The translations under genes and the position numbers were made by a program. From the IMG/VR virus record IMGVR_UViG_3300032770_000002, positions 166,254-230,253 of that record: a stretch of 64,000 nt of DNA; one strand, given 5' to 3'. Positions 592 through 41,642 of this stretch are shown here, piece after piece. Positions within the stretch are counted from its first letter, which is position 1, and each line of letters opens with the position of its first letter. The notes under the pieces are model-generated. The model did not search any database. It had not been told where the DNA came from and saw only the letters and a list, made by a program, of their open reading frames with translations.

Positions 592-603
592 GTTCTAAAA
601 CCA

Positions 604-882
604 GTGAACTACATCGTTTACGAAGAAGACGGTTTCGGAGTGGTGGAGTCACCTTGCGTTGAAGGGCGAAGTCTTGGCGTGTTTTCAGGGACGGAAGCTG
701 AGGTCGCGGCCTACTGTGAAGCTGAGACGCGTAAACTCCACCCGAAGCGAACGAACTGGGATTCACCGCAGATTCGTTTTAAGCCAGCGATTCAACTTAA
801 CCCAAATCACGTAGAATGGCAATCTTCATTAGTTTCGAAGGGGACGAGTGTGTCGGAAAGACCACACAAGCAAGCATCTTGA
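604..882 (+). CDS. hypothetical protein
   Basis: 92-aa ORF; GTTCTA element 6 nt before the GTG. Confidence 0.5.
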   Translation: MNYIVYEEDGFGVVESPCVEGRSLGVFSGTEAEVAAYCEAETRKLHPKRTNWDSPQIRFKPAIQLNPNHVEWQSSLVSKGTSVSERPHKQAS

Positions 883-1478
883 CGGCTCGGCTTAAGGCCT
901 CGCGCATCCCGGCCATCTTGGTCCGAGAACCTGGTGGGACGCCGTTTGGCGAAACATGCCGATCGATCCTAAAGGACCCAAACAACGACCTGTGCCCGGA
1001 AGCTGAGCTGCTCTTGATGAACGCTAGCCGCTCGCAACTTGTCAGCACAGTCATCTTGCCAGCTTTGAATGAAGGCGTTACCGTAATTGCCGATCGCTTT
1101 CATGACTCGACCATCGCCTATCAGGGTTACGGGCGTGAATTGGGACAGAAGGCCGAAGACGTTGTCAACGTCGCCATCGGTGACGTCATCCCAGACATTA
1201 CCTTTTACCTGTGGGCGGCCAAGGGCACGAAGGAACGCCGACAAATTCAGCGTGGAGCTCCGCCAACTGACAAGTTTGAGTCGCTAGACCAGGCCTTTTT
1301 TGCTAGGGTGCGTGAAGGCTACGAGCACATCATGACTCATAATGCGCGCGTTGCGTGCATCGAATCTAGCGGCGCCATTGACCAGGTTTCAGACGCAATT
1401 TGGAGCAAGCTACTCAGCTGGAAGGAGTGGTGCGTAAATCGGCCCAAAAAGCCCTGGGAGCCAAGTCTCAGCTTGTGA
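816..1478 (+). CDS. tmk: thymidylate (dNMP) kinase
   Basis: FISFEGDECVGKTTQ P-loop, REPGGT, ADRFHDSTIAYQG, PDITFYL motifs. Confidence 0.92.
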   Translation: MAIFISFEGDECVGKTTQASILTARLKASRIPAILVREPGGTPFGETCRSILKDPNNDLCPEAELLLMNASRSQLVSTVILPALNEGVTVIADRFHDSTIAYQGYGRELGQKAEDVVNVAIGDVIPDITFYLWAAKGTKERRQIQRGAPPTDKFESLDQAFFARVREGYEHIMTHNARVACIESSGAIDQVSDAIWSKLLSWKEWCVNRPKKPWEPSLSL

Positions 1479-1500
1479 GTATATTTAGGTTACGAACGAT

Positions 1501-1722
1501 ATGAAAAACGAACAGTTAGCTAACCAGATCTGTGACCAACTTTTGGCCCGTGAAGAAGTTAAAGAATGCGGCCCTGGAATGCGCGGCAGCCGCTCCGCCG
1601 AAGGGTCCGGAAGCCGAGCTGGGTTTGCTTCTCGGGCTTCGCGTGGATCCGCATCAGCTTCCCGTGAAGCGTCCGCGTCGCGTGAAGCATCGGCCTCGCG
1701 TGAAGCGGCTGGGTCGCGCTAG
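1501..1722 (+). CDS. small low-complexity protein with ASREAS repeats, putative internal head protein
   Basis: 73-aa ORF; N-terminus LANQICDQLLAREE; repeat-rich tail. Confidence 0.55.
   Translation: MKNEQLANQICDQLLAREEVKECGPGMRGSRSAEGSGSRAGFASRASRGSASASREASASREASASREAAGSR
1657..1710 (+). repeat. three imperfect 18-nt coding tandem repeats (ASREAS)
   Basis: gcttcccgtgaagcgtcc / gcgtcgcgtgaagcatcg / gcctcgcgtgaagcggct. Confidence 0.8.
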
Positions 1723-1994
1723 AAGGCCTTGATTTCGATGACCGGAAGTTGTGAACCGTCCGCCATTACCGGACGGTTTCGTTTTGTCTCCTGAAGGTCA
1801 TCTTCGGTTATTGCCGAGTTCCAGCACTCGGAACACAAGAATCCATCGTAGCCGTAGATGGAGTGGAAGTCGGATGATTTAATGAGGAGGGTTTGGCAGT
1901 TGACGCACACCCCACACGTCACCATGTCACGGTGCCACCCGATTATTGAGTAGCCCGCGTTGTCAACCCCAAAGTCGTCTGATTTTGCGGACAT
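1719..1994 (-). CDS. small Cys-rich (Zn-ribbon-like) hypothetical protein
   Basis: CVNC...CSEC pairs; stop overlaps the convergent gene. Confidence 0.45.
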   Translation of the reverse strand: MSAKSDDFGVDNAGYSIIGWHRDMVTCGVCVNCQTLLIKSSDFHSIYGYDGFLCSECWNSAITEDDLQETKRNRPVMADGSQLPVIEIKAF

Positions 1995-2037
1995 TGGTTT
2001 CTTCTCGCGATTTAAGAACAGCAGTGTTCTCAGGTTC

Positions 2038-2643
2038 GTGCGTTATTTACCTGGACATCAATTTGAAAGTGGTTTGATTTTAGTAAGGAGATCTCGAACC
2101 GTTCATCGAGGAATTTTCAAGTGTGTTTGCGGTGATGAATTTGAAACATTTATAGCCAATGTCGCTAGGGGTATTACTCGATCATGTGGATGTCTTAAGT
2201 CAATACTTCGTCGACAAACACTGGGTCCAATCGATTACGAGTCTGCTCGTGATAAAATTCTCTTTTCTACGATCAAATTTCATGCCAAAGATCGAGGTCT
2301 TGAGTTTGAGTTAACTCTCGATGATGTCCGAAGATTAACGCGTCAAAACTGCCATTTCTGTGGGAGTCCTCCGGCCAGTCGTCATTTTATTGGAGGTCGA
2401 AATAGACTTGCGTCATTTTACATCATTCATAATGGGATTGACCGATTGGATAATCTAAAAGGTTACACTGTCAAAAACTCGGTGCCCTGCTGTAAACAGT
2501 GCAACTATTCAAAACGCGACAACAGTGTCGACGAATTTAACGCCTGGATTGATCGCGTTGTGGCCCATCGTAACGCGGTTAAAGATCAAAGTGAGATGGC
2601 TTCAACAGTGATTCTCAGACGAAATTGTCAGTTGACGTGTTAA
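2038..2643 (+). CDS. HNH homing-endonuclease-like protein
   Basis: CVCG...SCGC N-terminal motif; CHFCG...GIDRLDNLKGYTVKNSVPCCKQCNYSK HNH motif; lower GC than flanks; start placed at GTG 2038 (ORF track starts at 1960). Confidence 0.8.
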   Translation: MRYLPGHQFESGLILVRRSRTVHRGIFKCVCGDEFETFIANVARGITRSCGCLKSILRRQTLGPIDYESARDKILFSTIKFHAKDRGLEFELTLDDVRRLTRQNCHFCGSPPASRHFIGGRNRLASFYIIHNGIDRLDNLKGYTVKNSVPCCKQCNYSKRDNSVDEFNAWIDRVVAHRNAVKDQSEMASTVILRRNCQLTC

Positions 2644-3679: not shown

Positions 3680-3686
3680 GGTTAAA

Positions 3687-4160
3687 CTACGCTGGCACTT
3701 TCTTCAGGCTGATGAACCACGGTCGTTCATAGTCAATTGACTTCATGGCTCGAATGAGGCCGTCGACTGACGCCGGAAATTTGGCCTGGATGTTTCGGAA
3801 CATTCCAGTCATTGACAGTGCGTCAAGTTCGTTGTGGCTTGGGCCGTAGGTTGGGTAGTCCGCGTAGCCAACTAAGCCGACCGGCAGTTTTTGGAAGTCA
3901 ATGTCAAGCTTGACTTGCTCAAAGGCCCGCTCAAGCAGGAATGGCGTGATCGTGTAGACGATCGGACGCAGACCGGCGATGGCCATCCCGGCGGCAAATC
4001 CAACCATGCTCTGCTCGGCAATTCCAAACTCAATGTGCCTCCGCGGGCAGAGCGCGCGAAACGTGTCGAACATCGCTCCGCCGACGTCGCCAGTGATGAG
4101 GTGGACACGCCCGTCTTGCAGGCCTAACGCGGCAATGGATTCGGCAAACTGTTTTCTCAT
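3687..4160 (-). CDS. transketolase, pyrimidine-binding (C-terminal-type) subunit
   Basis: LITGDVG, FGIAEQSMVGFAAGMAIAGLRP, FLLERAFEQVKLD, GPSH. Confidence 0.88.
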   Translation of the reverse strand: MRKQFAESIAALGLQDGRVHLITGDVGGAMFDTFRALCPRRHIEFGIAEQSMVGFAAGMAIAGLRPIVYTITPFLLERAFEQVKLDIDFQKLPVGLVGYADYPTYGPSHNELDALSMTGMFRNIQAKFPASVDGLIRAMKSIDYERPWFISLKKVPA

Positions 4161-4792
4161 AGTTCGGACATGATCGATTGAAATTCAGGGTCGGTTAGGA
4201 AGTGAACGTGCCAGTCAGGGTGGGCTTCGAAAAGCTTGACACCGAAGCCCTTCTGGCGTCCGTATGTCTTGATTGGGAACACTTGGTTCATGAGCTTAGT
4301 GATTGACGGATCGAGACACCGGCACGAGCCCTGCCACCCGTTGTCGTCGACGTGAACGGTGAGATTATCGAGGTTGTATCGGCGGGCGACGTTCAAACTT
4401 TCCCACGTCGTTCCCTCAAGGCACTCGCCATCGCCAAGCAGGACGTGGACGTGGCCAGGGGCGTGGATAAACTTCTTGGCGTAGGCGATCCCGACGGCCG
4501 TTGGAAGGCCGTGTCCAAGGCTGCCTGTTGTTGACGGAATGCCATTGGCCGGGTCAATGTCAGGGTGGACCTTCATGACGTTAGGGTGAAAGCCGTGGCT
4601 CTCCAAGACCGCAAACCACGCGACACACGCGTGACCCTTGCTAAGGATGAAGACGTCATTCTTGTGGTCGAATTGCTTGTAGATGTCCACGATGACCGGA
4701 AGTGCGCTCAGGCTGCTGGCGATGTGGCCGTGTGAGTTGATGTCACGGTGGGACCTGGCTATTTCAATGACGCGGCGAATGAGTTCTTTCAT
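4157..4792 (-). CDS. transketolase, N-terminal TPP-binding subunit
   Basis: GHIASSLS, FILSKGHA, TTGSLGHGL, GDGECLEGTTWE...DDN TPP motif. Confidence 0.9.
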   Translation of the reverse strand: MKELIRRVIEIARSHRDINSHGHIASSLSALPVIVDIYKQFDHKNDVFILSKGHACVAWFAVLESHGFHPNVMKVHPDIDPANGIPSTTGSLGHGLPTAVGIAYAKKFIHAPGHVHVLLGDGECLEGTTWESLNVARRYNLDNLTVHVDDNGWQGSCRCLDPSITKLMNQVFPIKTYGRQKGFGVKLFEAHPDWHVHFLTDPEFQSIMSEL

Positions 4793-4794
4793 AC

Positions 4795-5466
4795 ATGTTT
4801 AGCAAAGAAGAAGTCATCTCGAGCTTGACCACTCCACGTCAAGCTCTGCTTAACCCGGCTCGGTGGAACCAATTCCTCTCGATGGGCCTGCCGATTAAGG
4901 ACAAGACGATTTTTGAGCCAGGCGCTGGCATCGGCGACCAGACTGATTGGCTGTTGAAGCAGGGCGTGAAACACGTCACGGTCCACGACGGCCGGCCGGA
5001 GTCGTTGAAGGTGATTCAAGACCGTTTCGGCTCTGACCCTCGGCTCAGTTACGTGTGCGGTAACTTGGAGAACGGCCTGACTGAAGCGCAGTTCAACTTC
5101 ACCGTTGACTTCATCTACTGCTATGGCGTCTACTATCATCTCAACGAGTCAATGCAGAATTGGAACATCATGAAAGGCCTCGCCAAGATGGGACCAACCA
5201 TGGCCTTTGACTACCTTGAAAGTCACCGTGGTGACGACTACACGTATTCATACGGGTATGAAGTTCCAAGCACGTCAATGAGCCGGTTTGCGCTGCGTCC
5301 GACTCGCGCGACTTTAATCAAGGCTGTCAGGGACATCTGGGGCTTTGCCTACTTGCCAAAGAACCAGCTTCAGTGGAATGACCCTTACGACGGGACGGAG
5401 CGGCGCTTTGTCATGGTCGCTTCTCATGTTCCATTGGACGGCGCTAACCTTGAGCTTCAGACCTGA
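4795..5466 (+). CDS. class I SAM-dependent methyltransferase
   Basis: IFEPGAGIGD motif I, VHDGR, DFIYCYGVYYHL. Confidence 0.8.
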   Translation: MFSKEEVISSLTTPRQALLNPARWNQFLSMGLPIKDKTIFEPGAGIGDQTDWLLKQGVKHVTVHDGRPESLKVIQDRFGSDPRLSYVCGNLENGLTEAQFNFTVDFIYCYGVYYHLNESMQNWNIMKGLAKMGPTMAFDYLESHRGDDYTYSYGYEVPSTSMSRFALRPTRATLIKAVRDIWGFAYLPKNQLQWNDPYDGTERRFVMVASHVPLDGANLELQT

Positions 5467-5839
5467 CAGAGTCTGTTAGGGCTTTAGACACCTTCTGGCG
5501 TAGAATCAACGTGAGCAGGTGTTGGGCCGCGTCGCCTAGTTCTGGGTCATTTTTAATGTTGTGGAGCCATGTTGTGCAAAGGGTCTTGGCCGTTTCAGGG
5601 CCAAACGAGTCAATAAATTCATTGTCTTTCAAAAAGAAGACAATGATACCCTGTGGCAGCTTTCCTTTCAAAACTCGATGAATAGCTTGGTATATGTGCA
5701 TCCGCCTTTGGGCGCCTTTAACGCGAATGACGAGAAGAGACCCTGGCTTTAATTCGCGGACGTCACCCACAAGCTCACACGAGATCAGGGTAGACAACCA
5801 CAAGCCAAAGACGCGTAGAAAGTAAAATTTTTTAATCAT
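5444..5839 (-). CDS. hypothetical protein
   Basis: ORF; ATG 5839 overlaps the upstream stop (ATGATTAA). Confidence 0.45.
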   Translation of the reverse strand: MIKKFYFLRVFGLWLSTLISCELVGDVRELKPGSLLVIRVKGAQRRMHIYQAIHRVLKGKLPQGIIVFFLKDNEFIDSFGPETAKTLCTTWLHNIKNDPELGDAAQHLLTLILRQKVSKALTDSVRSEAQG

Positions 5840-6596
5840 TGAGGTTGTTGAGTTCACGCTCGAGTTGATCGACGCCATTGACGAGAACCACGCGGTCGTC
5901 AAAGTTCACGAGGTCGTGGCTGTAGTTGACCCACCGCTTGACGTGTGGAAAAGCGAGCTCATTGAACGTGGCCAGGAATGGGGCGTTGGCCACGCCAACC
6001 ACGAACTTGCACCGCGACGCCAGTTCACCGATTTGGTTGAGTTTCAACCCGAGTTGAGTCGTCACGGGGATGCGGTCATCGCCGCAAGGGTGAGTGGCCA
6101 CAAGTTTAAACTTTCCAGCAAAGCGGCGAACCAGCTCGTCAACTAGGCCCTGTGAAAACCCATGGCACTGCCCGCTCAATGGCGTGGAGTTGACGAAGAG
6201 CATGTCAAATGACTGGCCGCTGAGAGGGTGATTCGGGTCCATTGACTCGGCTGGAAACAACATCTCCTTGTGGCTCGGCGTGGCCCACGAAAGCCCTAAC
6301 AACTTGGCGATGTAGCCGTGAAACTCAATGAGAAAGTCGAGGAACTTGCTCGGGTTGCGGCGCGTCTGATACCAGTTATCACGGCCTATCCACCCATCAA
6401 AAGACCCGTCGACGTGCTTGTCAGTAATGATTAGGTTTGGCAACTTTCTGGCCATTCCACGAACCTGGTCGACATACTCCGGACGCACTGAAAAGACGAA
6501 CTCGTCCGTAGTTCGTTTGGCCGCAATGTTGAGGAACATTAACATGAACAACTGGTCACCGCAATGAAATGACGAAAAGACGTTCTTTGTTGACAT
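5832..6596 (-). CDS. glycosyltransferase-like protein (GT-B/GT9-like)
   Basis: N-terminal HCGDQL; C-terminal LNQIGELASRCKFVVGVANAP resembles the heptosyltransferase-type motif. Confidence 0.5.
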   Translation of the reverse strand: MSTKNVFSSFHCGDQLFMLMFLNIAAKRTTDEFVFSVRPEYVDQVRGMARKLPNLIITDKHVDGSFDGWIGRDNWYQTRRNPSKFLDFLIEFHGYIAKLLGLSWATPSHKEMLFPAESMDPNHPLSGQSFDMLFVNSTPLSGQCHGFSQGLVDELVRRFAGKFKLVATHPCGDDRIPVTTQLGLKLNQIGELASRCKFVVGVANAPFLATFNELAFPHVKRWVNYSHDLVNFDDRVVLVNGVDQLERELNNLND

Positions 6597-7337
6597 ATGA
6601 TCGTGATGACTACTCTGTTCCGATTAACCGGAGAACTAGCGAGTGATCGATTGAAGGAATTTCGGTATTGCATCGAGAAAAATGCTGACAACCCGATTGT
6701 CGAAAAGCTTCACGTCCTGTGGGAGCGGAAAGATCCTATCAAGTCTCGCGATCCGAAGCTGAAGGTGCGGGAGCATTACTTCGGTGATCCATTCCCGTTC
6801 GATGACGACCATCTATTTTTGAATCATCCTAAGATCACCGTTCATATCTGTGATGGTCGGCCGATGTATAGCGACTTTATTCGTGTGGCCAGGGACGAGC
6901 ACCTTGAAGGAAAGGTCATTGCAATTTGCAACACAGACATTTGGACTGACGAGACCTTAGCCCTGGCCGAGAACATCCAGACTGACACGATTTACGCCAT
7001 CACGCGCCACAACTGGGACCCTGGAAAAAAGGAGTCCACTGGGTTGCAAGGTGACGGGCTGCACGGGTCACAGGACACGTGGATCTTTCGCCACCCGCTC
7101 AGGCCATTCCAGAATGAGATCTACATGGGCGTTCTTGGGTGTGATTCATATTTTGCCCAGAAAGCCATCGAGATGGGCATCACGGTCATCAACCCGTGCC
7201 GCCAGATCAAGACGTATCACCTGCACACGATCGGGTGGCGAAACAACACTCCAGGCGGAAAAAGCTACTGGGATTCACCCGATTACATGGCTGTCTGTAT
7301 TCAACCGAGTGACATTAATGCGCCGCCGGCGCCCTAA
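6597..7337 (+). CDS. glycosyltransferase-like protein (GT-A-like)
   Basis: ICNTDIWTDE (xxD motif), AITR, SQDTWIF, GVLGCDS, NPC...YHLH; pattern typical of viral GT-like proteins. Confidence 0.55.
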   Translation: MIVMTTLFRLTGELASDRLKEFRYCIEKNADNPIVEKLHVLWERKDPIKSRDPKLKVREHYFGDPFPFDDDHLFLNHPKITVHICDGRPMYSDFIRVARDEHLEGKVIAICNTDIWTDETLALAENIQTDTIYAITRHNWDPGKKESTGLQGDGLHGSQDTWIFRHPLRPFQNEIYMGVLGCDSYFAQKAIEMGITVINPCRQIKTYHLHTIGWRNNTPGGKSYWDSPDYMAVCIQPSDINAPPAP

Positions 7338-7356
7338 AAATTTTTCCACTTTTTTG

Positions 7357-7384
7357 TTTACAAATGTCAGAAGAGCGGTATATT
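7357..7384 (+). promoter_or_regulatory. class 1 sigma70-like promoter TTTACA-N16-TATATT
   Basis: tttttgTTTACAaatgtcagaagagcggTATATT. Confidence 0.8.
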
Positions 7385-9025: not shown

Positions 9026-9648
9026 AATGGACGCATTGCAAATATGACGGTGCAAGGCTGAGGAAAGATGCGGACAATACTGTCCAACGAAAAACTGTCA
9101 GTGGCACCATGGTCTTCCGACGTCAGAAGATGATGGGCCTCCACGTCATCGAAAATTCCATCGTGTTCCTATGGGTGATGTCAACCGCTCGACGAGTCAT
9201 TGACCAAGTTGCTGAGTCTGACGACCTCAGTCAGGCCATTCGTCAGCGTGAACACTTGATCCTGTGCATGCGCGACCCAGCATTTGTCGCGCGGAGTGAA
9301 AATCCTCGGAAAGCCATTACTGGAGACATTCTCAAGATCACACGGAGAATGAAGCACCCGCCTGGTTCAACAGTCCACATCATGCAATTGACCAGGGACG
9401 CCGAGGACATTGATCGGCCGTGGGACCGCGGCACGCGAACGGTTCGTGCAACTCAGTTTCAAGGAATTCCACCGCAGGACAGTAAGACGTGGGGTCGTCC
9501 AACTTATGGTCATTCCGTTGATTATTGGAACTATGAACCACACGAGTGGGGCACCCAGGAAGTCGAACTGGTCGGGCACGGAAAACGTCATGAGCTGGGA
9601 CGGCTATGGACGCCACGGCCTGGAAATCCTGGCTACGATTTGGGCTAG
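9022..9648 (+). CDS. hypothetical protein
   Basis: 208-aa ORF with ATGA coupling. Confidence 0.6.
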   Translation: MKWTHCKYDGARLRKDADNTVQRKTVSGTMVFRRQKMMGLHVIENSIVFLWVMSTARRVIDQVAESDDLSQAIRQREHLILCMRDPAFVARSENPRKAITGDILKITRRMKHPPGSTVHIMQLTRDAEDIDRPWDRGTRTVRATQFQGIPPQDSKTWGRPTYGHSVDYWNYEPHEWGTQEVELVGHGKRHELGRLWTPRPGNPGYDLG

Positions 9649-9655
9649 TTAGCAT

Positions 9656-10075
9656 ATGCCGAGTTTAGCTCGAGTCGTCATCAACATTTTCGAGGCATGT
9701 TACTGCCAAGCCTCTGGCGAGGAGGTCGTCAACTACCTGCTTGACATTGGCACGTCACATGGCGGATTTTTGCCAAAAACCTTGCGTGACATCGCCGGCC
9801 GTGACTTTGAGTTGACGTCAGTTCCCATTGACGACCTGCTCAGGTCCGATGACAAGTTCGCTGAATTTTATCGCAAGACCAAGCGGCCAGACCCAAACAA
9901 ACCTTACCAGCCGCGTGATTTAAGGCAGACCGACAAGGGTGAGCCGGTGGAGGCTGAGGACTTGATTGACTCGCCAGTCGTTGTCATTGATGGGAAGCTC
10001 CGTGACGGGTGGCACAGAACGGCCGGAAAATTGGACAGGGGTGACAAGAAGGTCTTGGCATACGTAGCAAAATGA
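9656..10075 (+). CDS. ParB/Srx-like domain protein
   Basis: VPIDDL...PVVVIDGKLRDGWHR...VLAYV (DGxHR motif). Confidence 0.55.
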   Translation: MPSLARVVINIFEACYCQASGEEVVNYLLDIGTSHGGFLPKTLRDIAGRDFELTSVPIDDLLRSDDKFAEFYRKTKRPDPNKPYQPRDLRQTDKGEPVEAEDLIDSPVVVIDGKLRDGWHRTAGKLDRGDKKVLAYVAK

Positions 10076-11171: not shown

Positions 11172-12126
11172 CGAACATGTCTAGCCGCTTGGCGTAGGGC
11201 GTCAGTCTATGGAAGTCGACCCACTCCAGAAAGTTGTCCAGGTCATTCTGGTCCAAGTTGGTCAGCCCGAGATAGTCAAGGAACGTGAACATCAGCCCGT
11301 CTGGGCGCGCAAGCTGAAGGCTGCGCATAAATTCACCCGTTGAAAATTCAAAGACGCGGCGCACGCGCTTCGTCACGGTTGTGATTTCGGGCTTTACGCC
11401 CAATGACGCCCACGTCAGCTCCTTTCCAGCACACGGCCCAGACGGCCCGCCAGTCCGTATCGGATATGTCCTAAAGACGCCATAGTAGCTCCAGTCAAGT
11501 CCACCAAGCCCATTGCGCTCAACTGCAACCCTCGGCAGCGTTGAGCGTGACGTGACGTGTGGAAAGAGCCCAAAATTCGTGTCGAGCAACAGGCCTTGTG
11601 AGCACTCAAAGATGGCCAAGTTGGAACTGATGTGCGAGATCAGGTTGAAGTAGGCCTCGTTGTCAACGACGACGATGTCCTGGTTGAGTGAGAAGAAGTC
11701 ATGTTCAATGACTGACTCAACACGGCGGTGGATAAACTTCCCTGCCCGGGCCATCCCTGTCCCTGACCCAGTTGACGAAATTCGCCTTACCAGGTCGGAT
11801 TCGTCGGCCTTCATCTCAGGCATTAAGACGGCCGCGTGCTCGTGGATGTAAATCGGCTTTTTGACGGCGCGCCAGTCTCGTTGAAGAAGTTCGAGTTCGA
11901 TGACTGAGTCTGGGCCCATCAAGATCGAGTCGGCCCAAAAGCTTGAAGCCGGGATGGAGCGCGTTGACCCTTGGGTGCTCGTGTGTCCGGAGTTCGGGCC
12001 GTTTTCACCAATGACGGTCAAGTGGAGTCCCGGGTATTCAGCCCTCAGTTTCTTGGCCAAAAATTCAGCCGCTGAGGCTTTTCCTTCACTGCCATATTGC
12101 CCGCCAAAGACAACGACGTGACGCAT
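11134..12126 (-). CDS. purZ: adenylosuccinate synthetase homologue, PurZ/PurZ0-like
   Basis: GGQYGSEGK (Ser where PurA has the catalytic Asp), PNSGHT, STGSGTG, ECSQGLLLD..FPHVTSRS, RTYPIRTGGPSGP, TTVTKRVRRV, TFLDY; 330 aa. Confidence 0.75.
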   Translation of the reverse strand: MRHVVVFGGQYGSEGKASAAEFLAKKLRAEYPGLHLTVIGENGPNSGHTSTQGSTRSIPASSFWADSILMGPDSVIELELLQRDWRAVKKPIYIHEHAAVLMPEMKADESDLVRRISSTGSGTGMARAGKFIHRRVESVIEHDFFSLNQDIVVVDNEAYFNLISHISSNLAIFECSQGLLLDTNFGLFPHVTSRSTLPRVAVERNGLGGLDWSYYGVFRTYPIRTGGPSGPCAGKELTWASLGVKPEITTVTKRVRRVFEFSTGEFMRSLQLARPDGLMFTFLDYLGLTNLDQNDLDNFLEWVDFHRLTPYAKRLDMFVSCQTGNFVHLQ

Positions 12127-12150
12127 GAGCTGAAGAACGTTCTATCGACC
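12127..12150. promoter_or_regulatory. bidirectional class 2 element (palindrome AGAACGTTCT)
   Basis: GTTCTT (minus) and GTTCTA (plus) each lie exactly 6 nt before the ATGs at 12126 and 12151. Confidence 0.65.
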
Positions 12151-12663
12151 ATGCATCGTTCCATCAAGATTATCTCCGGTGGTCAGACGGGGGCCGATCG
12201 TGCTGGTTTAATTTTTGCTCGCGACAACAACATCCCGTATGGAGGCTATGTGCCTTTGCGTCGAAAGGCCGAAGACGGGGTGGTGCCGATGATCTTCACC
12301 GAGATGACTGAGTCGGCATCGTCAGATTATCGTGTCAGGACTGAGTTAAACGTGAGAGAGGCCGACTGCACGATCGTCTTTACACGCTGCCCGCTCAGTG
12401 AAGTGGCCAGCGGGTCATGGCTGACGATTGCCTTCGCAAAGAAGTATGGGAAGGAGTGGCGGCACGTTGACGTCAACAAGCCGAACATGAACGAGGTTGA
12501 CAAGTGGCTTGAGATGCTTTACGCCAGGTGGCATCACTACGGAAGCGGGCTTCAATTCACGATCAACGTCGCTGGTGGGCGCGAGTCAAAGAACCGCGGC
12601 ATTCAAGACGCGGTCCTGGCGCTGTTAAAATCATCCACATTTTTGTTTACAAATCAAGGTTAG
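12151..12663 (+). CDS. SLOG-superfamily protein (putative molybdenum-carrier / YpsA-like)
   Basis: KIISGGQTGADRAGL, YRVRTELNVREADCTIVF, INVAGGRES. Confidence 0.8.
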   Translation: MHRSIKIISGGQTGADRAGLIFARDNNIPYGGYVPLRRKAEDGVVPMIFTEMTESASSDYRVRTELNVREADCTIVFTRCPLSEVASGSWLTIAFAKKYGKEWRHVDVNKPNMNEVDKWLEMLYARWHHYGSGLQFTINVAGGRESKNRGIQDAVLALLKSSTFLFTNQG

Positions 12664-17455: not shown

Positions 17456-18298
17456 CTAGTCCCTAATTGCCCGGTCGAGGACTTCTGAATAGTGGTCAAT
17501 TTGGTTGTGCTTAAACCGCCTGACCCAGGCCGGGTGGCTGACTCGCCGAATCGGTGTCAACCCTAATTTTCTCAAGCCTTCGTGGGCTACGTTGCCCATG
17601 GCGATGATCTTCAACGTTGGTTTCCAGACCATCAAAGCCTGAATCAGGTTGGCTTCAGTCGGGTGAATGATGTTTGTCCACATTAGGTCCGATTCAAGCA
17701 CGTTGCTTTTTTCAAGGGCCAAGCTAATGTAACTGGCGGCGTCCCGGTCGTCGAAAAATGGCCAATGTTCGAAGTCCAAATATCGGTTGATTTCTTCACC
17801 TACTAAGACGGCCCGCGCTCGAATGTGCCCGCTCAGATTTTTGAGCCTAGGGTCAAGGGCTTCCGGAAACTGTGAATGGCGAAGCGCCGTCATTCGTTCG
17901 ATGGCGACGCGCGGCGTGTGCGAACCTGTCCACACGATGACGTCCGGGCGTGGAGCTTGGAGTGTCTCACACTTGAGCAAGGCCTTTTGGAGCGTGCTAG
18001 ACGTGATGATGTTGACAGCTCCAAATCGAAGCATGACTCTGTCGATGGCGCGAGCGGCTGCGAGAAAATTCTCTGATGAATCGGCAAGTTCTTTAACCCA
18101 GTTTGTGCAAACAATGACGAGATGATCACACGAAAGATCAATCGATTTTCTGACGATTTCGGTCAAGTAGATAAAGCGTCTTGACGATGACGACTTATCC
18201 ACGCGAATCACACTTGACTTAACCGTCGGTCCGACCACTTTTTGAATCAAGTCAACCATTTCGTGGCTAAAGTCATCTATGCAGATCAGTCCACGCAT
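17456..18298 (-). CDS. hypothetical protein with C-terminal uracil-DNA-glycosylase-like domain
   Basis: VLVGEE..WPFF..WTN..IIAMGNVA..SHPAWVRR resembles UDG-superfamily motifs. Confidence 0.5.
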   Translation of the reverse strand: MRGLICIDDFSHEMVDLIQKVVGPTVKSSVIRVDKSSSSRRFIYLTEIVRKSIDLSCDHLVIVCTNWVKELADSSENFLAAARAIDRVMLRFGAVNIITSSTLQKALLKCETLQAPRPDVIVWTGSHTPRVAIERMTALRHSQFPEALDPRLKNLSGHIRARAVLVGEEINRYLDFEHWPFFDDRDAASYISLALEKSNVLESDLMWTNIIHPTEANLIQALMVWKPTLKIIAMGNVAHEGLRKLGLTPIRRVSHPAWVRRFKHNQIDHYSEVLDRAIRD

Positions 18299-18321
18299 GC
18301 TAGGGTAGAACGAATTTCACT

Positions 18322-21772: not shown

Positions 21773-22544
21773 CGACTTTCTTTTAAACGAAACCGAAGTG
21801 GCCTATCTGACGTGTTTGGCTAACGTCATGGACAATGGAAAACCGACCGGTCCAAGGGGCCAGCAAACGCGTGAAGTCTTAAACGCGTCATTCAAAATCA
21901 GGCACCCATCTTCAGCCCCAATTCGAACGTGTGACCTAGAACGGAACAAGGTCATTGCGGAGTATACCCACAAGGAGATGGAGCTTTATCTTAGCGGTTC
22001 GAATAGCGTCAGTGACTTTGCAAAGGCAAGCCAATTCTGGAAGAAAATTGCCAACCCAGATGGGACCATCAATTCGGCCTACGGTTATTTGATTTGGCAC
22101 GAGAAAAGCTGTGGTGACCCAACAATGGAGGTCCCACATTTTGAACCAGGACGGATGAATGGAAGTTTGGCCATGCGGACTCCGTGGGAGTGGGCCCGCA
22201 ATTCCATGCTTCAAGATAAGGACACCAGACAAGCATTCCTTCGGTTTAGCCTGCCACGTCACCAGTGGGTCGGCAACCGCGACCAAGTCTGCACGATGCA
22301 CGGTCACTTTGTCATCCGCGACGACAAGCTGAACTTCTCCATCGTGATGCGGTCAAATGATTGTTTTAAGGGCCTCGTCTATGACCTTCCGTTTTTCATT
22401 AAGCTCATGGAATTGATGGCCGACGAGCTGAAGCCGACTTATCCAAATCTCCAAGTTGGCGAGTATTTTCACCTCGCCCACAGTCTCCACATCTACGAGT
22501 CAGACATCCCAAAGATCTTGAAGATGCTAGGCAGTTCTGCTTAG
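21714..22544 (+). CDS. thymidylate synthase homologue, probable dCMP (hydroxy)methylase type
   Basis: NSAYG, DTRQA, DQVCT (catalytic Cys), MRSNDCFKGLVYD (Asp at the E. coli ThyA N177 position), HSLHIYE; start uncertain. Confidence 0.8.
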   Translation: MSTLQTTSSSAKTPREWRLSDFLLNETEVAYLTCLANVMDNGKPTGPRGQQTREVLNASFKIRHPSSAPIRTCDLERNKVIAEYTHKEMELYLSGSNSVSDFAKASQFWKKIANPDGTINSAYGYLIWHEKSCGDPTMEVPHFEPGRMNGSLAMRTPWEWARNSMLQDKDTRQAFLRFSLPRHQWVGNRDQVCTMHGHFVIRDDKLNFSIVMRSNDCFKGLVYDLPFFIKLMELMADELKPTYPNLQVGEYFHLAHSLHIYESDIPKILKMLGSSA

Positions 22545-22545
22545 T

Positions 22546-23055
22546 GTGTCAAGACAAATCGTCCACTACTTGGGCCACGGCATGTCAGCCTGCATGCGGG
22601 AAGGGCCCCCTTCGCTGTGGCCTGACAACCATAAGTGGTCAAGTGACTGGAAGGACGTTACATGTGGAGAATGTCTCCTTGGAAAAAACGAAGTCCACAC
22701 GTTCATGATTTCGCCTGATGGTCGAAGCATCACGTGTCTTCGGTGCCACATGACGAGCTTTAATCCAACGGACGTCGAGCGACACTACTGCAGCTACTGT
22801 GATGTCTTCCATGACGACCTTTGGCCTCCAGCAAGGCGGGCGTGGATGCATTCACTTCTGGCCACGGTTAACCAAGTCTATGACGAAGACACGTTTTCGG
22901 TGACGGATCGACAAGGACAATCACACTGCATTTACGTTTCCAACCATGACGTCAATGTTGGCGACATCGGCATTCTTCGATATAACGATCGTGATTGGTC
23001 TTGGAAGCGGTTGGAAAAGCGCGAAACCGGCGTCGTCCTGATCTCCAGAAAATAA
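22546..23055 (+). CDS. Cys/His-rich hypothetical protein
   Basis: VTCGEC, ITCLRC..YCSYC..FH; GTTCTG 6 nt upstream. Confidence 0.6.
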   Translation: MSRQIVHYLGHGMSACMREGPPSLWPDNHKWSSDWKDVTCGECLLGKNEVHTFMISPDGRSITCLRCHMTSFNPTDVERHYCSYCDVFHDDLWPPARRAWMHSLLATVNQVYDEDTFSVTDRQGQSHCIYVSNHDVNVGDIGILRYNDRDWSWKRLEKRETGVVLISRK

Positions 23056-24531: not shown

Positions 24532-24541
24532 TTAGCCCAAG

Positions 24542-29461: not shown

Positions 29462-29972
29462 CCACCATCGCGGCAAGTTCAGCCGCTGCAGCCTGCATTG
29501 CCGAGGAGATGGACTGGTATTCACCTGCATTCTGGCCGTAGTGGCGAATGACGCTAAGGAACCCGGTGATGAAGATGTCATCAGGCACCAGCTTTAACTG
29601 GACCCGCTCGTCCTCATCGCGTTTCGGAATTCCATGGCGGTCGGTGACAACCTTGATGTGGGAAAGCTCGTGGTCAAGCAAAGCTTCACGCTGCTGGTCG
29701 TTCTTCTCCTCCCACATGTGGCCGTCAATGTCAATTTCGGCCTCGTGCGGGTCGCGCAACTTACGCCTCCGGCTAATCAGCTTTACGTAGGCTTCGCAAT
29801 AGTGCCCGGCGTGCTTGAGGGCCGGGGTTGGCTCGTCGTCCTTGTCAAAGGCCTTGACGAAGTTCAATGACACCCTGGACTGGGCGTCAACGAGTTCGTG
29901 GTGATATCGGGCCATGACTTGGTTGAGCATGGCGTAATCGGCACGCGTGCCGTCGGAGAACGCTTTAGACAT
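29397..29972 (-). CDS. phage metallopeptidase-like protein
   Basis: REALLDHELSHI (HExxH), then VIRHYG. Confidence 0.72.
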   Translation of the reverse strand: MSKAFSDGTRADYAMLNQVMARYHHELVDAQSRVSLNFVKAFDKDDEPTPALKHAGHYCEAYVKLISRRRKLRDPHEAEIDIDGHMWEEKNDQQREALLDHELSHIKVVTDRHGIPKRDEDERVQLKLVPDDIFITGFLSVIRHYGQNAGEYQSISSAMQAAAAELAAMVVSQNGAETENAAAAEALATAA

Positions 29973-29986
29973 ACAGATGAGAACTA

Positions 29987-35927: not shown

Positions 35928-35933
35928 TTTTTG

Positions 35934-35961: not shown

Positions 35962-35965
35962 GGTT

Positions 35966-36604: not shown

Positions 36605-36612
36605 TCAACGTT

Positions 36613-37179: not shown

Positions 37180-37423
37180 GCGGATACTCGCGCAAGAGGC
37201 GGCCCAGTTCCTGGATTACCTTAAAAGCGTCCCCGTTGCGCCCAGTCTCTTCCATCCACAAGGCCACGGCATTCCTCAGCCCTTCGCTGCCAAGAGTCTT
37301 CCAGAGTGAATGCAGGTTGTCCTGCCAGTCATATTGGCCGACCTCGTCCTGGATGAACTCGGCCGCCAGGTCCTCTGGGTCTTCAACTTCAAAGGCAGAC
37401 TCAATCAGTTTCTTTGCCAGCAC
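37061..37423 (-). CDS. hypothetical protein (N-terminus LAKKLIESAFE)
   Basis: TAGTTA 4 nt upstream; convergent overlap with the neighbour. Confidence 0.5.
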   Translation of the reverse strand: MLAKKLIESAFEVEDPEDLAAEFIQDEVGQYDWQDNLHSLWKTLGSEGLRNAVALWMEETGRNGDAFKVIQELGRLLREYPLTRWQQMIRQRVPQPVPRRGQIVRRQIVAPSKLGPGEPV

Positions 37424-37474
37424 GCCGTAACTAATGCGAGTTTACACACGAGCCGAAGTTCTGTATCTTGTCAT

Positions 37475-37666
37475 ATGAGTGAAGACGCTAACGGGAAGTG
37501 GTGCGTGCTCGTTGACGGGCGCCAGGTGACTGGTCCACTTGACGAGTCCTCCGCTAAGACCCAAGCAGATGAACGCCGACGAAAAATCGCCAAGTCCAAG
37601 TCAACCAACGAAGGACAAGGCGCTTCCGTCCCAATCATCGAAGCGAAACAAATCCTCTTCGGTTGA
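37475..37666 (+). CDS. hypothetical protein
   Basis: ORF from ATG 37475 ending KQILFG. Confidence 0.5.
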   Translation: MSEDANGKWCVLVDGRQVTGPLDESSAKTQADERRRKIAKSKSTNEGQGASVPIIEAKQILFG

Positions 37667-38276: not shown

Positions 38277-38279
38277 GCG

Positions 38280-40388: not shown

Positions 40389-40391
40389 TTG

Positions 40392-40419
40392 TTTACAAAT
40401 TTAGGATTCGTGGTATACT
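40392..40419 (+). promoter_or_regulatory. class 1 promoter, leaderless
   Basis: TTTACA-N16-TATACT, then ggggcc-ATG (40426). Confidence 0.85.
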
Positions 40420-40425
40420 GGGGCC

Positions 40426-40608
40426 ATGAAGAAGTTTGTTGTCCTGCTCTTTATGGCCTGCTCAGGGTGCGTCACATACATCGAGCCGGGCTATCACGAC
40501 ATTGACGGGGCCGCTCGATGGACGAGCGCCGATTACAGTCAAAGTTCCTGGGTTGAATTTCAATCTGAACCAGGGACTCCAGTCAGAATTCGTCGGTCTA
40601 ACCCTTAG
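40426..40608 (+). CDS. small putative lipoprotein
   Basis: MKKFVVLLFMACSGC signal with lipobox-like SGC. Confidence 0.6.
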   Translation: MKKFVVLLFMACSGCVTYIEPGYHDIDGAARWTSADYSQSSWVEFQSEPGTPVRIRRSNP

Positions 40609-40613
40609 ACTTT

Positions 40614-41288
40614 ATGCCAGAATACGTCCTTGGAAAGAAGCCAAGAAAAAAGATCACGCCATTCATTGATTGCGAATTTTTTGTGATTTCTCACTCACGT
40701 CATCGGCTCTATTGGACTATCAGAGGTCAATTTGTAGGGTTAAATGGGTCAAAGCGTAAAATCTACATTGAAGATCTATTAGATGAGTCCTATATTCTAA
40801 TTCATCTAATTCATCCAGATAGGTTTTGCTTTAAATTTAAGGCCCATCCTTCTAACGTGGAGGCGGAATTTCGTGAGGCCGTCAGCCGAATGGGCGTTTC
40901 TCCATCTCACTATGAATTTATCTTAGATCGACCACTGACAGAGCTCCTTAATCTGTTGAAGACATTTCACGAAATGGACGTGGAAAAAGTCTACATGGGC
41001 GAACGCATCAAGCCAGACCGTTGCTTTGAGATTAAGGCAGATTTTCGTCCGTTCGTCTCAAAGTATCGATACATCGACAGGACTCGGAATGACTCAAAGC
41101 CAACATTTTACGCCTTTGTCCTGGGCCACAGAAAACCAGGAGACCAAGTCATGGAGGTTAAAGTCAGAGGTTCCTGGCAAAATAGGTGCGAGTTTGTCCT
41201 GCTCATCGGGCCTGACGAGGCCGATCAATTTCAGCTTGACATAAAGTTGTGCATGCGGGACATGGTTCAAAACGCCCTGAGTAGTTAG
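40614..41288 (+). CDS. hypothetical protein (lower GC)
   Basis: 224-aa ORF with AT-rich codons. Confidence 0.6.
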   Translation: MPEYVLGKKPRKKITPFIDCEFFVISHSRHRLYWTIRGQFVGLNGSKRKIYIEDLLDESYILIHLIHPDRFCFKFKAHPSNVEAEFREAVSRMGVSPSHYEFILDRPLTELLNLLKTFHEMDVEKVYMGERIKPDRCFEIKADFRPFVSKYRYIDRTRNDSKPTFYAFVLGHRKPGDQVMEVKVRGSWQNRCEFVLLIGPDEADQFQLDIKLCMRDMVQNALSS

Positions 41289-41336
41289 GCCGTTCTTTGA
41301 CATCCGCACCAGCGGTAGAAAGCGAGGTGATTGCAA

Positions 41337-41624
41337 ATGACGCGAACCGTCATAAAAGGTCAGCACGTAATCTTCGTTGATGAGGACAGAGTCGAACACG
41401 CGGCGCTCGTGACACAAGTCTGGGGCACTGGAACGTGGGATGACGAAAAACCACTGGTTCCGAATGGAGACCAAGCAAATTGGCCGACATGTCTGAATAT
41501 GGTCTATGTCCTCAAAGATGATAAACGCACGGACCAATACGGCAACCAAATTCGCCACGTGTCAAGTGTGGTTCACCAGTCCTTGAGTCAAGCGGCTGGC
41601 GGCTACATGTGGCATCACGCGTAA
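41337..41624 (+). CDS. hypothetical protein
   Basis: HAALVTQVW...CLNMVYV phage-type motif. Confidence 0.6.
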   Translation: MTRTVIKGQHVIFVDEDRVEHAALVTQVWGTGTWDDEKPLVPNGDQANWPTCLNMVYVLKDDKRTDQYGNQIRHVSSVVHQSLSQAAGGYMWHHA

Positions 41625-41642
41625 AGAGGTTCTGTAAAGTGC

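What the first reader, a model, noticed from the sequence alone, without database searches (positions are those of the whole stretch)
592..41642. Second promoter class: GTTCTN about 6 nt before start codons (candidate phage-specific 'middle' element)
Seen: GTTCT(A/T/G/C) lies exactly 6 nt before the starts at 604, 2038, 4795, 12126(-), 12151, 22546 and 29972(-), 7 nt before 18298(-), and 8-11 nt before 41643, 6597 and 37475. None of these has the class 1 -35 box. The spacing equals the -10-to-ATG distance of the class 1 promoters. Several copies sit inside the coding sequence of the opposite-strand gene. Inference: a short -10-like element read by a phage sigma factor or phage RNA polymerase, giving leaderless mRNAs. 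Targets include nucleotide- and sugar-modification genes.
Basis: partly seen in the sequence, partly recalled or inferred. Interest (0 to 1): 0.75.

Follow-up and report, generated by a model that had tools for sequence, protein, structure and literature searches.

The report
Phage middle-gene promoter motif GTTCT
A five-base motif, GTTCT, sits a fixed 7 (up to 10) bases before the start codons of a conserved set of DNA-replication and nucleotide-metabolism genes in this 230-kb phage and its distant relatives. It most likely acts as a phage-specific promoter that makes messenger RNAs with no leader, but no transcript data exist to prove it.

Summary
All 11 listed sites check out. An annotation-free count in the window gives 7 GTTCT sites exactly 7 nt before an ORF start, against 0.32 expected. 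Genome-wide, GTTCT at offset -12 is the best or near-best positional 5-mer (10 observed, 0.23 expected).

The window is the last 64 kb of a complete 230-kb T4-like myovirus from a wetland metagenome. The virus uses no Shine-Dalgarno sites, and its host is probably a member of the Verrucomicrobiota.

Four relatives share only 38-49% protein identity with it, yet carry the same motif at the same spacing. Pooled over 1285 genes the counts are d=7: 34, d=8-10: 12-19 each, d=4-6: 0-1.
- Motif genes sit at divergent operon heads twice as often as other genes.
- Orthologues keep the motif (0.47 against 0.075) although the flanking DNA is randomised.
- The set includes the PolA DNA polymerase, helicases and nucleotide genes.
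- The set excludes a second motif, TAGTTA, which precedes structural genes.
- A Verrucomicrobiota genome lacks both motifs.

The phage has no RNA polymerase gene. It does encode one divergent sigma-like protein, outside the window.

Best reading: a phage-specific "middle" promoter element at the -10 position that gives leaderless mRNAs. The protein that reads it, and the transcription start sites, remain unproven.

The parts
592..606 (+). GTTCT (592-596), 7 nt, then GTG 604. Head of a 92-aa ORF (604-882). The motif starts directly after the stop of the 1131-aa gene that ends at 591.
   Evidence: My gene caller did not call this ORF, because it overlaps the thymidylate kinase gene 816-1478.
2026..2040 (+). 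GTTCT (2026-2030), 7 nt, then GTG 2038. The gene is an HNH/endonuclease VII-like gene (2038-2643). It forms the arrangement AGAAC-N6-GTTCT with a copy on the opposite strand at 2015-2019.
   Evidence: (phrog_3322, 2e-13).
4783..4797 (+). GTTCT (4783-4787), 7 nt, then ATG 4795. The gene is a methyltransferase (4795-5466). The motif lies inside codons 2-4 of the divergent gene 4157-4792(-), whose start is 2 nt away.
   Evidence: junction 20.
6582..6599 (+). GTTCT (6582-6586), 10 nt, then ATG 6597 (246-aa gene). It stands back to back with gene 5832-6596(-), with no intergenic base between them.
   Evidence: It has the second-best flank score against the relatives' consensus.
12124..12138 (-). 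GTTCT (12138 down to 12134), 7 nt, then ATG 12126. The gene is the PurZ-like adenylosuccinate synthetase (11134-12126).
   Evidence: phrog_1211, 1.6e-41; junction 22.
12139..12153 (+). GTTCT (12139-12143), 7 nt, then ATG 12151. The gene is a cpYpsA SLOG-family gene (12151-12663). Together with the previous part it forms the palindrome AGAACGTTCT in a 24-nt divergent spacer.
   Evidence: PF12694, 2.6e-36.
18296..18311 (-). GTTCT (18311 down to 18307), 8 nt, then ATG 18298 (280-aa gene 17456-18298). It is divergent from the class II ribonucleotide reductase gene 18322-21135.
   Evidence: junction 24.
22534..22548 (+). GTTCT (22534-22538), 7 nt, then GTG 22546 (169-aa ORF). The motif lies inside the 3' end of the co-directional upstream gene, which ends at 22544.
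   Evidence: This GTG is the first start of the ORF.
29970..29984 (-). GTTCT (29984 down to 29980), 7 nt, then ATG 29972. The gene is a phage metallopeptidase-like gene (29397-29972).
   Evidence: PF18894, 4.9e-11.
41629..41645 (+). GTTCT (41629-41633), 9 nt, then ATG 41643. The gene is a GIY-YIG endonuclease-like ORF (41643-41918).
   Evidence: PF22945, 2.2e-7.
37458..37477 (+). GTTCT (37458-37462), 12 nt, then ATG 37475. This is a doubtful member: the spacing is outside the enriched 7-10 range and the ATG is internal to ORF 37310-37666.
54844..54876 (-). GTTCT (54876 down to 54872), 25 nt upstream of the PolA DNA polymerase start at 54846. In all four relatives the orthologous PolA gene has GTTCT 7-9 nt before its start. 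Here it would give a short leader.

Best explanation
GTTCT(W) is the core of a phage-specific promoter element. It takes the place of the -10 hexamer, at positions -12 to -7 relative to the A of the start codon. RNA polymerase starts transcription 7-10 nt downstream of GTTCT, at or just before the start codon. The mRNAs therefore have no leader, or almost none. This suits a phage and a likely host phylum that do not use Shine-Dalgarno sites.

The element marks a conserved set of DNA-replication and nucleotide-metabolism genes, a 'middle' class. That class is distinct from the sigma-A-like class 1 promoters (TTGTTTACAAA-N-TGGTATAnT, probably early). It is also distinct from a third motif, TAGTTA, which precedes structural (late) genes.

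The phage has no RNA polymerase of its own, so the host core enzyme must be redirected. The agent would be the phage's divergent sigma-like protein (G000:9264-10355) or another, unrecognised phage factor.

Shown here: the motif, its spacing, its conservation, its regulon and its absence from a host-phylum genome. Inferred: that it acts on DNA as a promoter, where transcription starts, and which protein reads it.
For: 1. Position. GTTCT at -12 is the best or near-best positional 5-mer in G000. It is also among the top-ranked positional 5-mers in relative G007 (11 observed, 0.27 expected) and the top one in G008 (8 observed, 0.10 expected).

2. Spacing. Pooled over 1285 genes of five genomes the counts are d=7: 34, d=8: 12, d=9: 19, d=10: 13, d=4-6: 0-1, with a background of 1-2. 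GTTCT plus 7-10 nt equals GTTCTN plus 6-9 nt. That is the range in which RNA polymerase picks its start downstream of a -10 element. It is reported as 6-8 bp, and once as 6-9 bp, for the single-element promoters of phage phiEco32 (PMC8948821). It also matches class 1 here, where 6-7 nt is the commonest distance.

3. Start context. The base before the start codon is a pyrimidine in 89% of d=7 and d=8 sites. It is C in 66% of d=7 sites, against 30% of all genes. The start codon begins with a purine in 122 of 124 sites.

4. Transcription-unit heads. 41% of motif genes are the first gene after a divergent junction, against 20% of other genes (p=2e-5). Some divergent pairs are only 0-24 nt apart, so their promoters must overlap the start regions.

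5. Regulon conservation. An orthologue of a motif gene has the motif with probability 0.47, against 0.075 otherwise (p=2e-32). Among pairs below 50% protein identity the figures are 0.39 and 0.08. The 30 nt upstream of the motif are only 29% identical between such pairs, which is about what unrelated sequence of this composition gives. PolA carries the motif in all five genomes.

6. Separate classes. Only 2 of 157 orthologues of GTTCT genes carry TAGTTA, against 126 of 1103 for other genes. TAGTTA precedes the sheath, portal and giant structural genes.

7. Phage-specific. In 314 genes of a Verrucomicrobiota genome (the closest ribonucleotide reductase relatives, 55-61% identity) there are 0 GTTCT at -12 and 0 TAGTT at -10, and no Shine-Dalgarno use.

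8. A candidate reader. One orthologous protein of 335-363 aa gives weak matches to the T4 gp55 late-sigma family in 4 of 5 genomes (E about 1e-4). It also matches Sigma70_r2 in 2 of 5 and the Mor helix-turn-helix family in 3 of 5. Nearly all of the 50 best Foldseek matches in the PDB are sigma factors; the best is sigma-32 at E=7e-3.

9. One anecdote. In relative G006 a strong intrinsic terminator is followed within 30 nt by GTTCT, 8 nt, then ATG.
Against: - There are no transcript or 5'-end data; no RNA run was listed.
- GTTCTW lacks the A at -11 and the T at -7 that sigma-70-family -10 elements normally need. No -35 partner is conserved. Matches to TTGACA/TTTACA are only slightly in excess (6 of 21 sites with at least 5 of 6 bases, against 5.6% of random positions).
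- The sigma-like protein is a weak call (model pLDDT 56, E-values 1e-4 to 7e-3). By analogy with T4 gp55 it may serve TAGTTA instead.
- The spacing profile alone would also fit a ribosome-binding-type signal.
- The flank consensus of the relatives (A-n-ATTC-n before GTTCT, TA after) transfers only weakly to this genome (p=0.057).
- Inside genes, the motif is depleted on the antisense strand in all five genomes (z -3 to -7). That ranks only 18th to 216th of 1024 5-mers under the same null, so it is not exceptional.
- About half of the motif genes are internal to co-directional runs.
Confidence: 0.6

Rival explanations
1. GTTCT acts in the RNA. GUUCU would lie in a short 5' leader and serve one of three roles: a non-Shine-Dalgarno ribosome-binding signal, the binding site of a phage translational repressor (as T4 RegA binds near the start codons of early mRNAs), or the target of a sequence-specific endoribonuclease (as T4 RegB cuts GGAG). 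The comparisons with T4 are from my own knowledge.
For: - The distance to the start codon is fixed, with a spread of 7-10 nt. That resembles the spacing of Shine-Dalgarno sites.
- About half of the motif genes are internal to co-directional gene runs.
- Neither the phage nor the host phylum uses Shine-Dalgarno sites, so another signal is conceivable.
Against: - The 3' ends of 16S rRNA in two Verrucomicrobiota genomes are the canonical GGATCACCTCCTTTCT, with nothing complementary to GUUCU in the free tail.
- The host-phylum genome has no GTTCT at -12, so this is not a general ribosome signal.
- Enrichment at divergent heads is not expected of a translation signal.
- The pyrimidine-purine context at the start codon and the identity with class 1 promoter geometry are not expected either.
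- In divergent pairs 0-24 nt apart, an RNA element would need both promoters to lie deep inside the neighbouring genes.
Confidence: 0.15
2. GTTCT is an operator, not a promoter element. A phage or host DNA-binding regulator would sit over the -12 to -8 region of weak, unrecognised promoters. It would switch a block of replication genes off or on together.
For: - Inverted arrangements AGAAC-Nx-GTTCT occur at several divergent junctions (window 2015/2026 and 12134/12139; genome 49076/49078 and 118759/118769).
- The regulon is conserved.
- This genome encodes a GerE/LuxR helix-turn-helix protein at G000:19271-19825.
Against: - The spacing between the two arms varies (0, 1, 6 and 10 nt), and most sites are single copies. 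That is unlike a dimer operator.
- No separate -10-like hexamer (TAnnnT) accompanies the motif.
- The GerE/LuxR protein has no counterpart in the four relatives that share the motif.
- A repressor site gives no reason for the sharp minimum distance to the start codon.
Confidence: 0.12
3. GTTCT is a promoter element read by an alternative sigma factor of the host rather than by a phage factor. An ECF (extracytoplasmic-function) sigma is one possibility: some ECF -10 elements contain GTT or GTC (from my own knowledge).
For: - The Verrucomicrobiota genomes examined carry 11-31 sigma-70-family genes each.
- The motif does not resemble a housekeeping -10 element.
Against: - ECF sigmas depend on a conserved -35 element (GGAAC-like), and none is present.
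- There are 0 occurrences at -12 among 314 genes of a host-phylum genome. However, a small regulon could be missed, and the true host is unknown.
Confidence: 0.08
4. The finding is chance, or an artefact of choosing start codons to fit the motif.
For:
- Several of the ORFs are small or were not called by my gene caller (604, 2038, 37475, 41643).
Against: - Annotation-free and rule-based choices of start give the same peak.
- 19 permutations of the motif's letters give about 1 hit per spacing. Their maximum is the same motif shifted by one base.
- The peak was found independently in four divergent genomes.
Confidence: 0.01

Closest known systems
Single-element middle/late promoters of coliphage phiEco32, read by the phage sigma factor gp36 (consensus tAATGTAtA, PMC8948821)
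   Same: Both are a short single element at the -10 position with no -35 partner. In phiEco32 the start site lies 6-8 bp downstream, which matches GTTCTN plus 6-9 nt here. Both serve non-early phage genes, and both depend on the host core polymerase plus a phage-encoded specificity protein. For this phage that last point is inferred.
   Different: The sequence is unrelated and is not TA-rich. Here most start codons coincide with the inferred start site, so the mRNAs would be leaderless. The candidate sigma here appears to have a C-terminal helix-turn-helix domain (Mor-like), whereas gp36 lacks region 4. Function is untested.
T4 late promoters (TATAAATA at -10) read by gp55, with gp33 and the sliding clamp; and T4 middle promoters (MotA box plus AsiA). 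From my own knowledge and PMC2988021 as listed.
   Same: The phage is T4-like in its head and tail genes: gp23-type capsid, S77 prohead protease, sheath and a UvsX-like recombinase. It has a gp55-like candidate. It has three tiers of motifs, and the later tiers are defined by a short element near -10.
   Different: The GTTCT set consists of replication genes. These belong to the middle class in T4, where specificity comes from a box at -30 plus a normal sigma-70 -10 element. Here nothing is conserved at -30, and the -10 position itself is replaced. No MotA or AsiA was looked for or found. T4 mRNAs have leaders with Shine-Dalgarno sites.
Leaderless middle and late transcripts of Thermus phages such as phiYS40 and P23-45 (from my own knowledge; not checked in a paper here)
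   Same: Many phage mRNAs start at the start codon, with promoters that have a -10 element only.
   Different: Those promoters are extended -10 elements of the TATAAT type, read by the host sigma-A. GTTCT is not of that type.
Short promoters of the non-virion RNA polymerases of jumbo phages (phiKZ, AR9; PMC5312081 and PMC7598289 as listed)
   Same: Jumbo phage; very short promoter motif near the start site; independent of the host sigma.
   Different: Those phages encode multisubunit RNA polymerases. None is detectable here: no Rpb1 or Rpb2 domains and no DxDGD motif in large proteins.

Membership tests
Sigma-70-family housekeeping -10 element (TAnnnT) | A at -11 and T at -7 on the non-template strand | tested here: not met
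   At 53 sites with d=7, position -11 is T in all 53. Position -7 is T in 25, A in 19, G in 7 and C in 2.
Sigma-70-family housekeeping promoter | -35 element (TTGACA-like) 16-18 bp upstream, or an extended -10 TG | tested here: not met
   No conserved column upstream of -19. There is a slight excess of near-matches (6 of 21 sites, against 5.6% of random positions). There is no TG at -15/-14.
Phage sigma-dependent single-element promoter (phiEco32 gp36 type, T4 gp55 type) | One short conserved element centred near -10 and no -35 | tested here: met
   Consensus A-n-ATTC-n-GTTCT-TA at -19 to -6, and nothing further upstream.
Phage sigma-dependent single-element promoter (phiEco32 gp36 type, T4 gp55 type) | Transcription starts 6-9 bp downstream of the element | not testable with these tools
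   Only inferred, from the spacing to start codons (never below 7 nt after GTTCT). No RNA run was listed.
Phage sigma-dependent single-element promoter (phiEco32 gp36 type, T4 gp55 type) | The phage encodes the sigma factor that reads it | tested here: inconclusive
   There is one sigma-like protein per genome. All matches are weak, and it could not be assigned to GTTCT rather than TAGTTA.
Promoter of a phage-encoded RNA polymerase (T7-like or multisubunit) | The phage encodes an RNA polymerase | tested here: not met
   PF00562 and PF00623 gave no match at E<=1, and their controls matched in 14 of 14 genomes. There is no DxDGD motif in large proteins. PF00940 also gave no match, but its control matched nowhere, so that search is uninformative.
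Shine-Dalgarno-type ribosome-binding site | Complementary to the free 3' end of the host 16S rRNA | tested here: not met
   The 16S 3' ends of two Verrucomicrobiota genomes are GGATCACCTCCTTTCT, with no AGAAC in the free tail. The true host is unknown.
ECF-sigma promoter | Conserved -35 element (GGAAC-like) about 16-17 bp upstream of a short -10 element | tested here: not met
   No such column in the matrices.

The most novel reading that the evidence does not exclude
A whole clade of T4-like jumbo phages, probably infecting Verrucomicrobiota, runs a three-tier and largely leaderless transcription programme. Its middle tier uses a -10-position element, GTTCT, that lacks the A(-11) and T(-7) bases which known sigma-70-family factors flip out of the helix. 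That would imply either a new mode of promoter recognition by a very divergent phage sigma, or a new way of taking over the host sigma. It would also mean promoters routinely embedded in the coding sequence of the neighbouring gene.
Probability: 0.35. Interest if true: 0.75.

Novelty: new variant of a known kind. Interest (0 to 1): 0.6.

Why it matters
- Almost nothing is known about promoters or translation initiation in Verrucomicrobiota or their phages. If the reading is right, it gives a ready-made map of early, middle and late regulons for an uncultivated clade of 200-250-kb phages.
- It provides a testable pair: a short non-TA promoter element and a candidate divergent sigma factor.
- It is an example of genome-wide leaderless expression in which promoters overlap neighbouring genes.
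- It also improves annotation: GTTCT plus 7 nt and TAGTTA plus 4 nt can be used to place start codons in these genomes.

Tried and rejected
- RNA evidence. Two run searches found only two wetland DNA runs and no RNA run. I did not use read laying, because DNA contigs cannot show transcription start sites.
- Relatives through the PurZ-like gene. An IMG/VR scan gave one relative at 31% identity. Three contigs carrying PurZ homologues of 60-67% identity showed no shared gene order and no GTTCT peak. PurZ appears to be mobile, so these are not the right relatives.
- PolA as a probe of IMG/VR gave nothing.
- A class 1 promoter pattern scan of IMG/VR gave 114 single hits, which look like chance.
- The 20-kb pieces around the capsid gene of three relatives held too few sites to test, and their records could not be searched whole. 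Four IMG/VR relatives could be fetched whole, and those gave the result.
- Sigma search with Pfam. Sigma70_r4 and TIGR02937 gave nothing. The Sigma70_r2 hit at window 7285-7383 (E=0.066) lies out of frame within gene 6597-7337 and is spurious. The Sigma70_r4_2 hit (E=0.009) is the GerE/LuxR protein, which is not conserved in the relatives.
- A profile search of the sigma-like family against PDB sequences gave nothing useful.
- The terminator-then-motif test was uninformative: only 15 of 1285 upstream regions have a clear intrinsic terminator.
- The test for motif avoidance by codon shuffling points the right way, but the result is not exceptional among 5-mers.
- The flank matrix from the relatives barely separates this genome's sites from its other GTTCT copies (p=0.057).
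- Pairing of GUUCU with GGAAC in the 16S helix-45 loop was considered and rejected. That loop is universal and carries dimethylated adenines (from my own knowledge).

Full report
WHAT THE WINDOW IS

The window is bases 166254-230253 of a 230,253-bp virus record. IMG/VR classes it as having direct terminal repeats, and its completeness is estimated at 100%. The only runs that hold it are two wetland metagenome DNA runs. GC content is 54%, and there are no tRNA genes.

It is a T4-like myovirus. It has a gp23-family major capsid protein, an S77 prohead protease, a tail sheath and a UvsX-like recombinase. In the window it also has:
- a family A DNA polymerase (PolA)
- a class II ribonucleotide reductase
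- an NAD-dependent ligase
- DnaB-like and SNF2 helicases
- thymidylate kinase, a radical-SAM enzyme and split transketolase-like genes
- a PurZ-like adenylosuccinate synthetase.

Genes are packed on both strands, with 63 strand switches among 308 called genes. Shine-Dalgarno sites are not used: 18% of upstream regions hold a GGAG-like word, against 12% of random windows.

The closest cellular relatives of the ribonucleotide reductase are all Verrucomicrobiota (55-61% identity), followed by Planctomycetota. The host is therefore probably from that group. A Verrucomicrobiota genome of similar GC content likewise shows no Shine-Dalgarno use (7.6%), although its 16S 3' end is canonical.

THE OBSERVATION

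Every coordinate in the finding is correct.
1. With my own dicodon-based gene calls, I scanned all 5-mers at all offsets from -40 to -5. GTTCT at -12 ranks first with starts chosen by maximum coding score (10 observed, 0.23 expected). It ranks third with the longest-ORF start (8 observed).
2. The spacing between GTTCT and starts of called genes peaks at 7 nt: 18 sites, against 1-7 at any other spacing.
3. In the window alone, with no gene model, 7 sites have d=7 against 0.32 expected, and other spacings have 0-2.

The class 1 promoter is real: TTGTTTACAAA, a 16-17 nt spacer, then TGGTATAnT. About 27 copies exist. The distance from the hexamer to ATG is 6 nt in 12 copies and 7 nt in 4.

RELATIVES

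The capsid protein has hundreds of relatives at 65-89% identity, many on contigs of 200-246 kb. Four IMG/VR records could be fetched whole: G005 (238 kb), G006 (199 kb), G007 (211 kb) and G008 (129 kb). They are very distant from this genome and from each other. Reciprocal best hits average 38-49% protein identity.

The same unbiased scan finds GTTCT at -12 among the top hits in G007 (11 observed, 0.27 expected) and as the top hit in G008 (8 observed, 0.10 expected). The motif is also present in G005 and G006.

Pooled over 1285 genes, the spacing profile is:
- d=7: 34
- d=8: 12
- d=9: 19
- d=10: 13
- d=4-6: 0-1
- other spacings: about 1-5.
Nineteen permutations of the motif's letters give about 1 per spacing.

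The profile has a sharp lower edge and a short upper tail. Written as GTTCTN plus 6-9 nt, it equals the window in which RNA polymerase chooses its start downstream of a -10 element. That distance is reported as 6-8 bp, and once as 6-9 bp, for the phage-sigma promoters of phiEco32 (PMC8948821).

The matrix of 53 sites with d=7 gives A at -19, A at -17, T at -16, T at -15, c at -14, then GTTCT, W at -7, g at -2 and C at -1 before ATG. Nothing is conserved further upstream. The base before the start codon is a pyrimidine in 89% of d=7 and d=8 sites. It is C in 66% of d=7 sites, against 30% of all genes.

DNA SIGNAL OR RNA SIGNAL?

Several results favour a promoter.
- Motif genes are the first gene after a divergent junction in 41% of cases, against 20% for other genes (p=2e-5).
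- Divergent partners can be 0, 2 or 24 nt apart (window 6596/6597, 4792/4795 and 12126/12151). The signals for each gene then lie in or beside the other gene's first codons.
- The motif is absent at -12 in 314 genes of a Verrucomicrobiota genome.
- It is not complementary to the free 3' tail of that phylum's 16S rRNA.
- Inside coding sequences, with synonymous codons shuffled as the control, the motif is depleted more strongly on the antisense strand (z -3.2 to -7.3) than on the sense strand (z -0.3 to -3.8), in all five genomes. An RNA signal would not predict this. However, the values rank only 18th to 216th of 1024 5-mers under the same null, so I give this little weight.
- Intrinsic terminators are too rare to test. 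One clear case exists, in G006: a terminator, then GTTCT within 30 nt, then 8 nt, then ATG.

A CONSERVED REGULON

If a gene carries GTTCT at d=7-10, its reciprocal-best-hit orthologue in another genome carries it with probability 0.47, against 0.075 otherwise (p=2e-32). For pairs below 50% protein identity the figures are 0.39 and 0.08. The 30 nt upstream of the motif are 29% identical in such pairs, about what unrelated sequence of this composition gives. The motif is therefore maintained by selection, not inherited passively.

Members of the set include:
- PolA in all five genomes: d=7 in G005 and G006, 9 in G007 and G008, and 25 in this genome at window 54872-54876(-)
- the gene divergent from PolA
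- the DnaB-like helicase
- a Helicase_C_2 helicase.
In this window the motif precedes the PurZ-like gene, a cpYpsA SLOG-family gene, a methyltransferase, two homing-endonuclease-like genes and a metallopeptidase-like gene.

A THIRD MOTIF

A second phage-specific motif, TAGTTA, is even stronger. Only 23 copies exist on both strands of this genome, and 17 of them lie 4-18 nt before a gene start. Its spacing peaks at 4 nt, with 40 of 1285 genes. It precedes the sheath, portal and giant structural genes.

Its regulon almost never overlaps the GTTCT regulon: 2 of 157 orthologues of GTTCT genes carry TAGTTA, against 126 of 1103 for other genes.

The simplest scheme has three tiers:
- class 1: host sigma-A type, early
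- GTTCT: replication and nucleotide metabolism, middle
- TAGTTA: structural, late.

WHO READS IT?

No RNA polymerase gene is detectable (the T7-type search had no working control). Pfam sigma domains give no significant match in six frames.

The T4 gp55 family (phrog_234, identified through T4 itself) hits one orthologous protein of 335-363 aa in four of the five genomes, each at E about 1e-4. In this genome the protein is at 9264-10355, outside the window. The further evidence on it is:
- The five orthologues share a stretch of the form KG-x-LFSWFSKCAKNAF, which resembles sigma region 2 (the resemblance is my own reading).
- Scanned singly, 2 of 5 match Sigma70_r2, 3 of 5 match the Mor helix-turn-helix family, and 4 of 5 match phrog_836, a 'late transcriptional activator'.
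- A low-confidence AlphaFold model (pLDDT 56, but 72-89 over residues 30-130) has sigma factors as nearly all of its 50 best Foldseek matches in the PDB. The best is sigma-32 at E=7e-3.
- There is one copy per genome.

I take it as a probable divergent sigma factor. Whether it reads GTTCT or TAGTTA cannot be decided here. By analogy with T4 it would read the late motif, and GTTCT would then need another factor.

The GerE/LuxR protein at G000:19271-19825 is not conserved in the relatives. It cannot be the reader of a motif shared by the whole clade.

LIMITS

- There are no transcript data.
- Gene calls are my own and crude.
- The host is inferred from one gene.
- In this genome the flanks of the motif fit the relatives' consensus only weakly (p=0.057). 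The case for this genome rests mainly on position and spacing.

VERDICT

The promoter reading is the best-supported explanation, at about 0.6. Its rivals are an RNA-level signal, an operator, and a host alternative sigma.

Compared with known systems, it works most like the single-element promoters of phage-encoded sigma factors (phiEco32 gp36, T4 gp55). It differs in three ways: the element has an unrelated, non-TA sequence; it sits in a leaderless architecture; and the phage group and host phylum have no known promoter biology. I rate it a new variant of a known kind, of moderate to good interest.

Noticed in passing
whole genome G000, including window 1-64000: The tetranucleotide GTAC is completely absent from the 230-kb genome (0 sites). 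Relative G005 has 8. Relatives G006 and G007 have normal GTAC counts but 0 CCWGG and 0 GGWCC. This is lineage-specific, total avoidance of short palindromes and points to restriction avoidance.
   Followed up: partly
window 9646-9651(+), 24529-24534(+), 37428-37433(-), 47817-47822(+), 51632-51637(-), and elsewhere in the genome: TAGTTA is a third upstream motif. Only 23 copies exist in the genome, and 17 lie 4-18 nt before gene starts. The extended consensus is G-TAGTTA-aggC-GTG. The spacing peaks at 4 nt in five genomes. It precedes structural genes and excludes the GTTCT set. It is probably the late promoter class.
   Followed up: partly
window 11134-12126(-); PolA at 51640-54846(-): A PurZ-like adenylosuccinate synthetase (phrog_1211, 1.6e-41), together with a family A DNA polymerase, suggests that the DNA may carry 2-aminoadenine in place of adenine. 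Homologues of 44-71% identity occur on many unrelated-looking phage contigs. I did not look for the partner enzymes.
   Followed up: no
G000:9264-10355 (outside the window): A divergent sigma-like protein is conserved in all five genomes. It gives weak matches to T4 gp55, Sigma70_r2 and the Mor family, and nearly all of its 50 best fold matches are sigma factors.
   Followed up: yes
G000:18936-19253 and 19271-19825 (outside the window): Just after the capsid gene lies a hybrid promoter: a class 1 -35 box with TGGTAT followed directly by GTTCT, then 7 nt and ATG. Downstream is a GerE/LuxR helix-turn-helix gene found only in this genome.
   Followed up: partly
window 6596/6597, 4792/4795 and 12126/12151: Divergent gene pairs whose start codons are 0, 2 and 24 nt apart. 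All their expression signals must lie inside, or right next to, the partner's coding sequence.
   Followed up: partly
L303 and L304 (16S rRNA of two Verrucomicrobiota genomes): The anti-Shine-Dalgarno tail is intact (CCTCC) in genomes whose genes show almost no Shine-Dalgarno sites: 7.6% of 314 genes.
   Followed up: no
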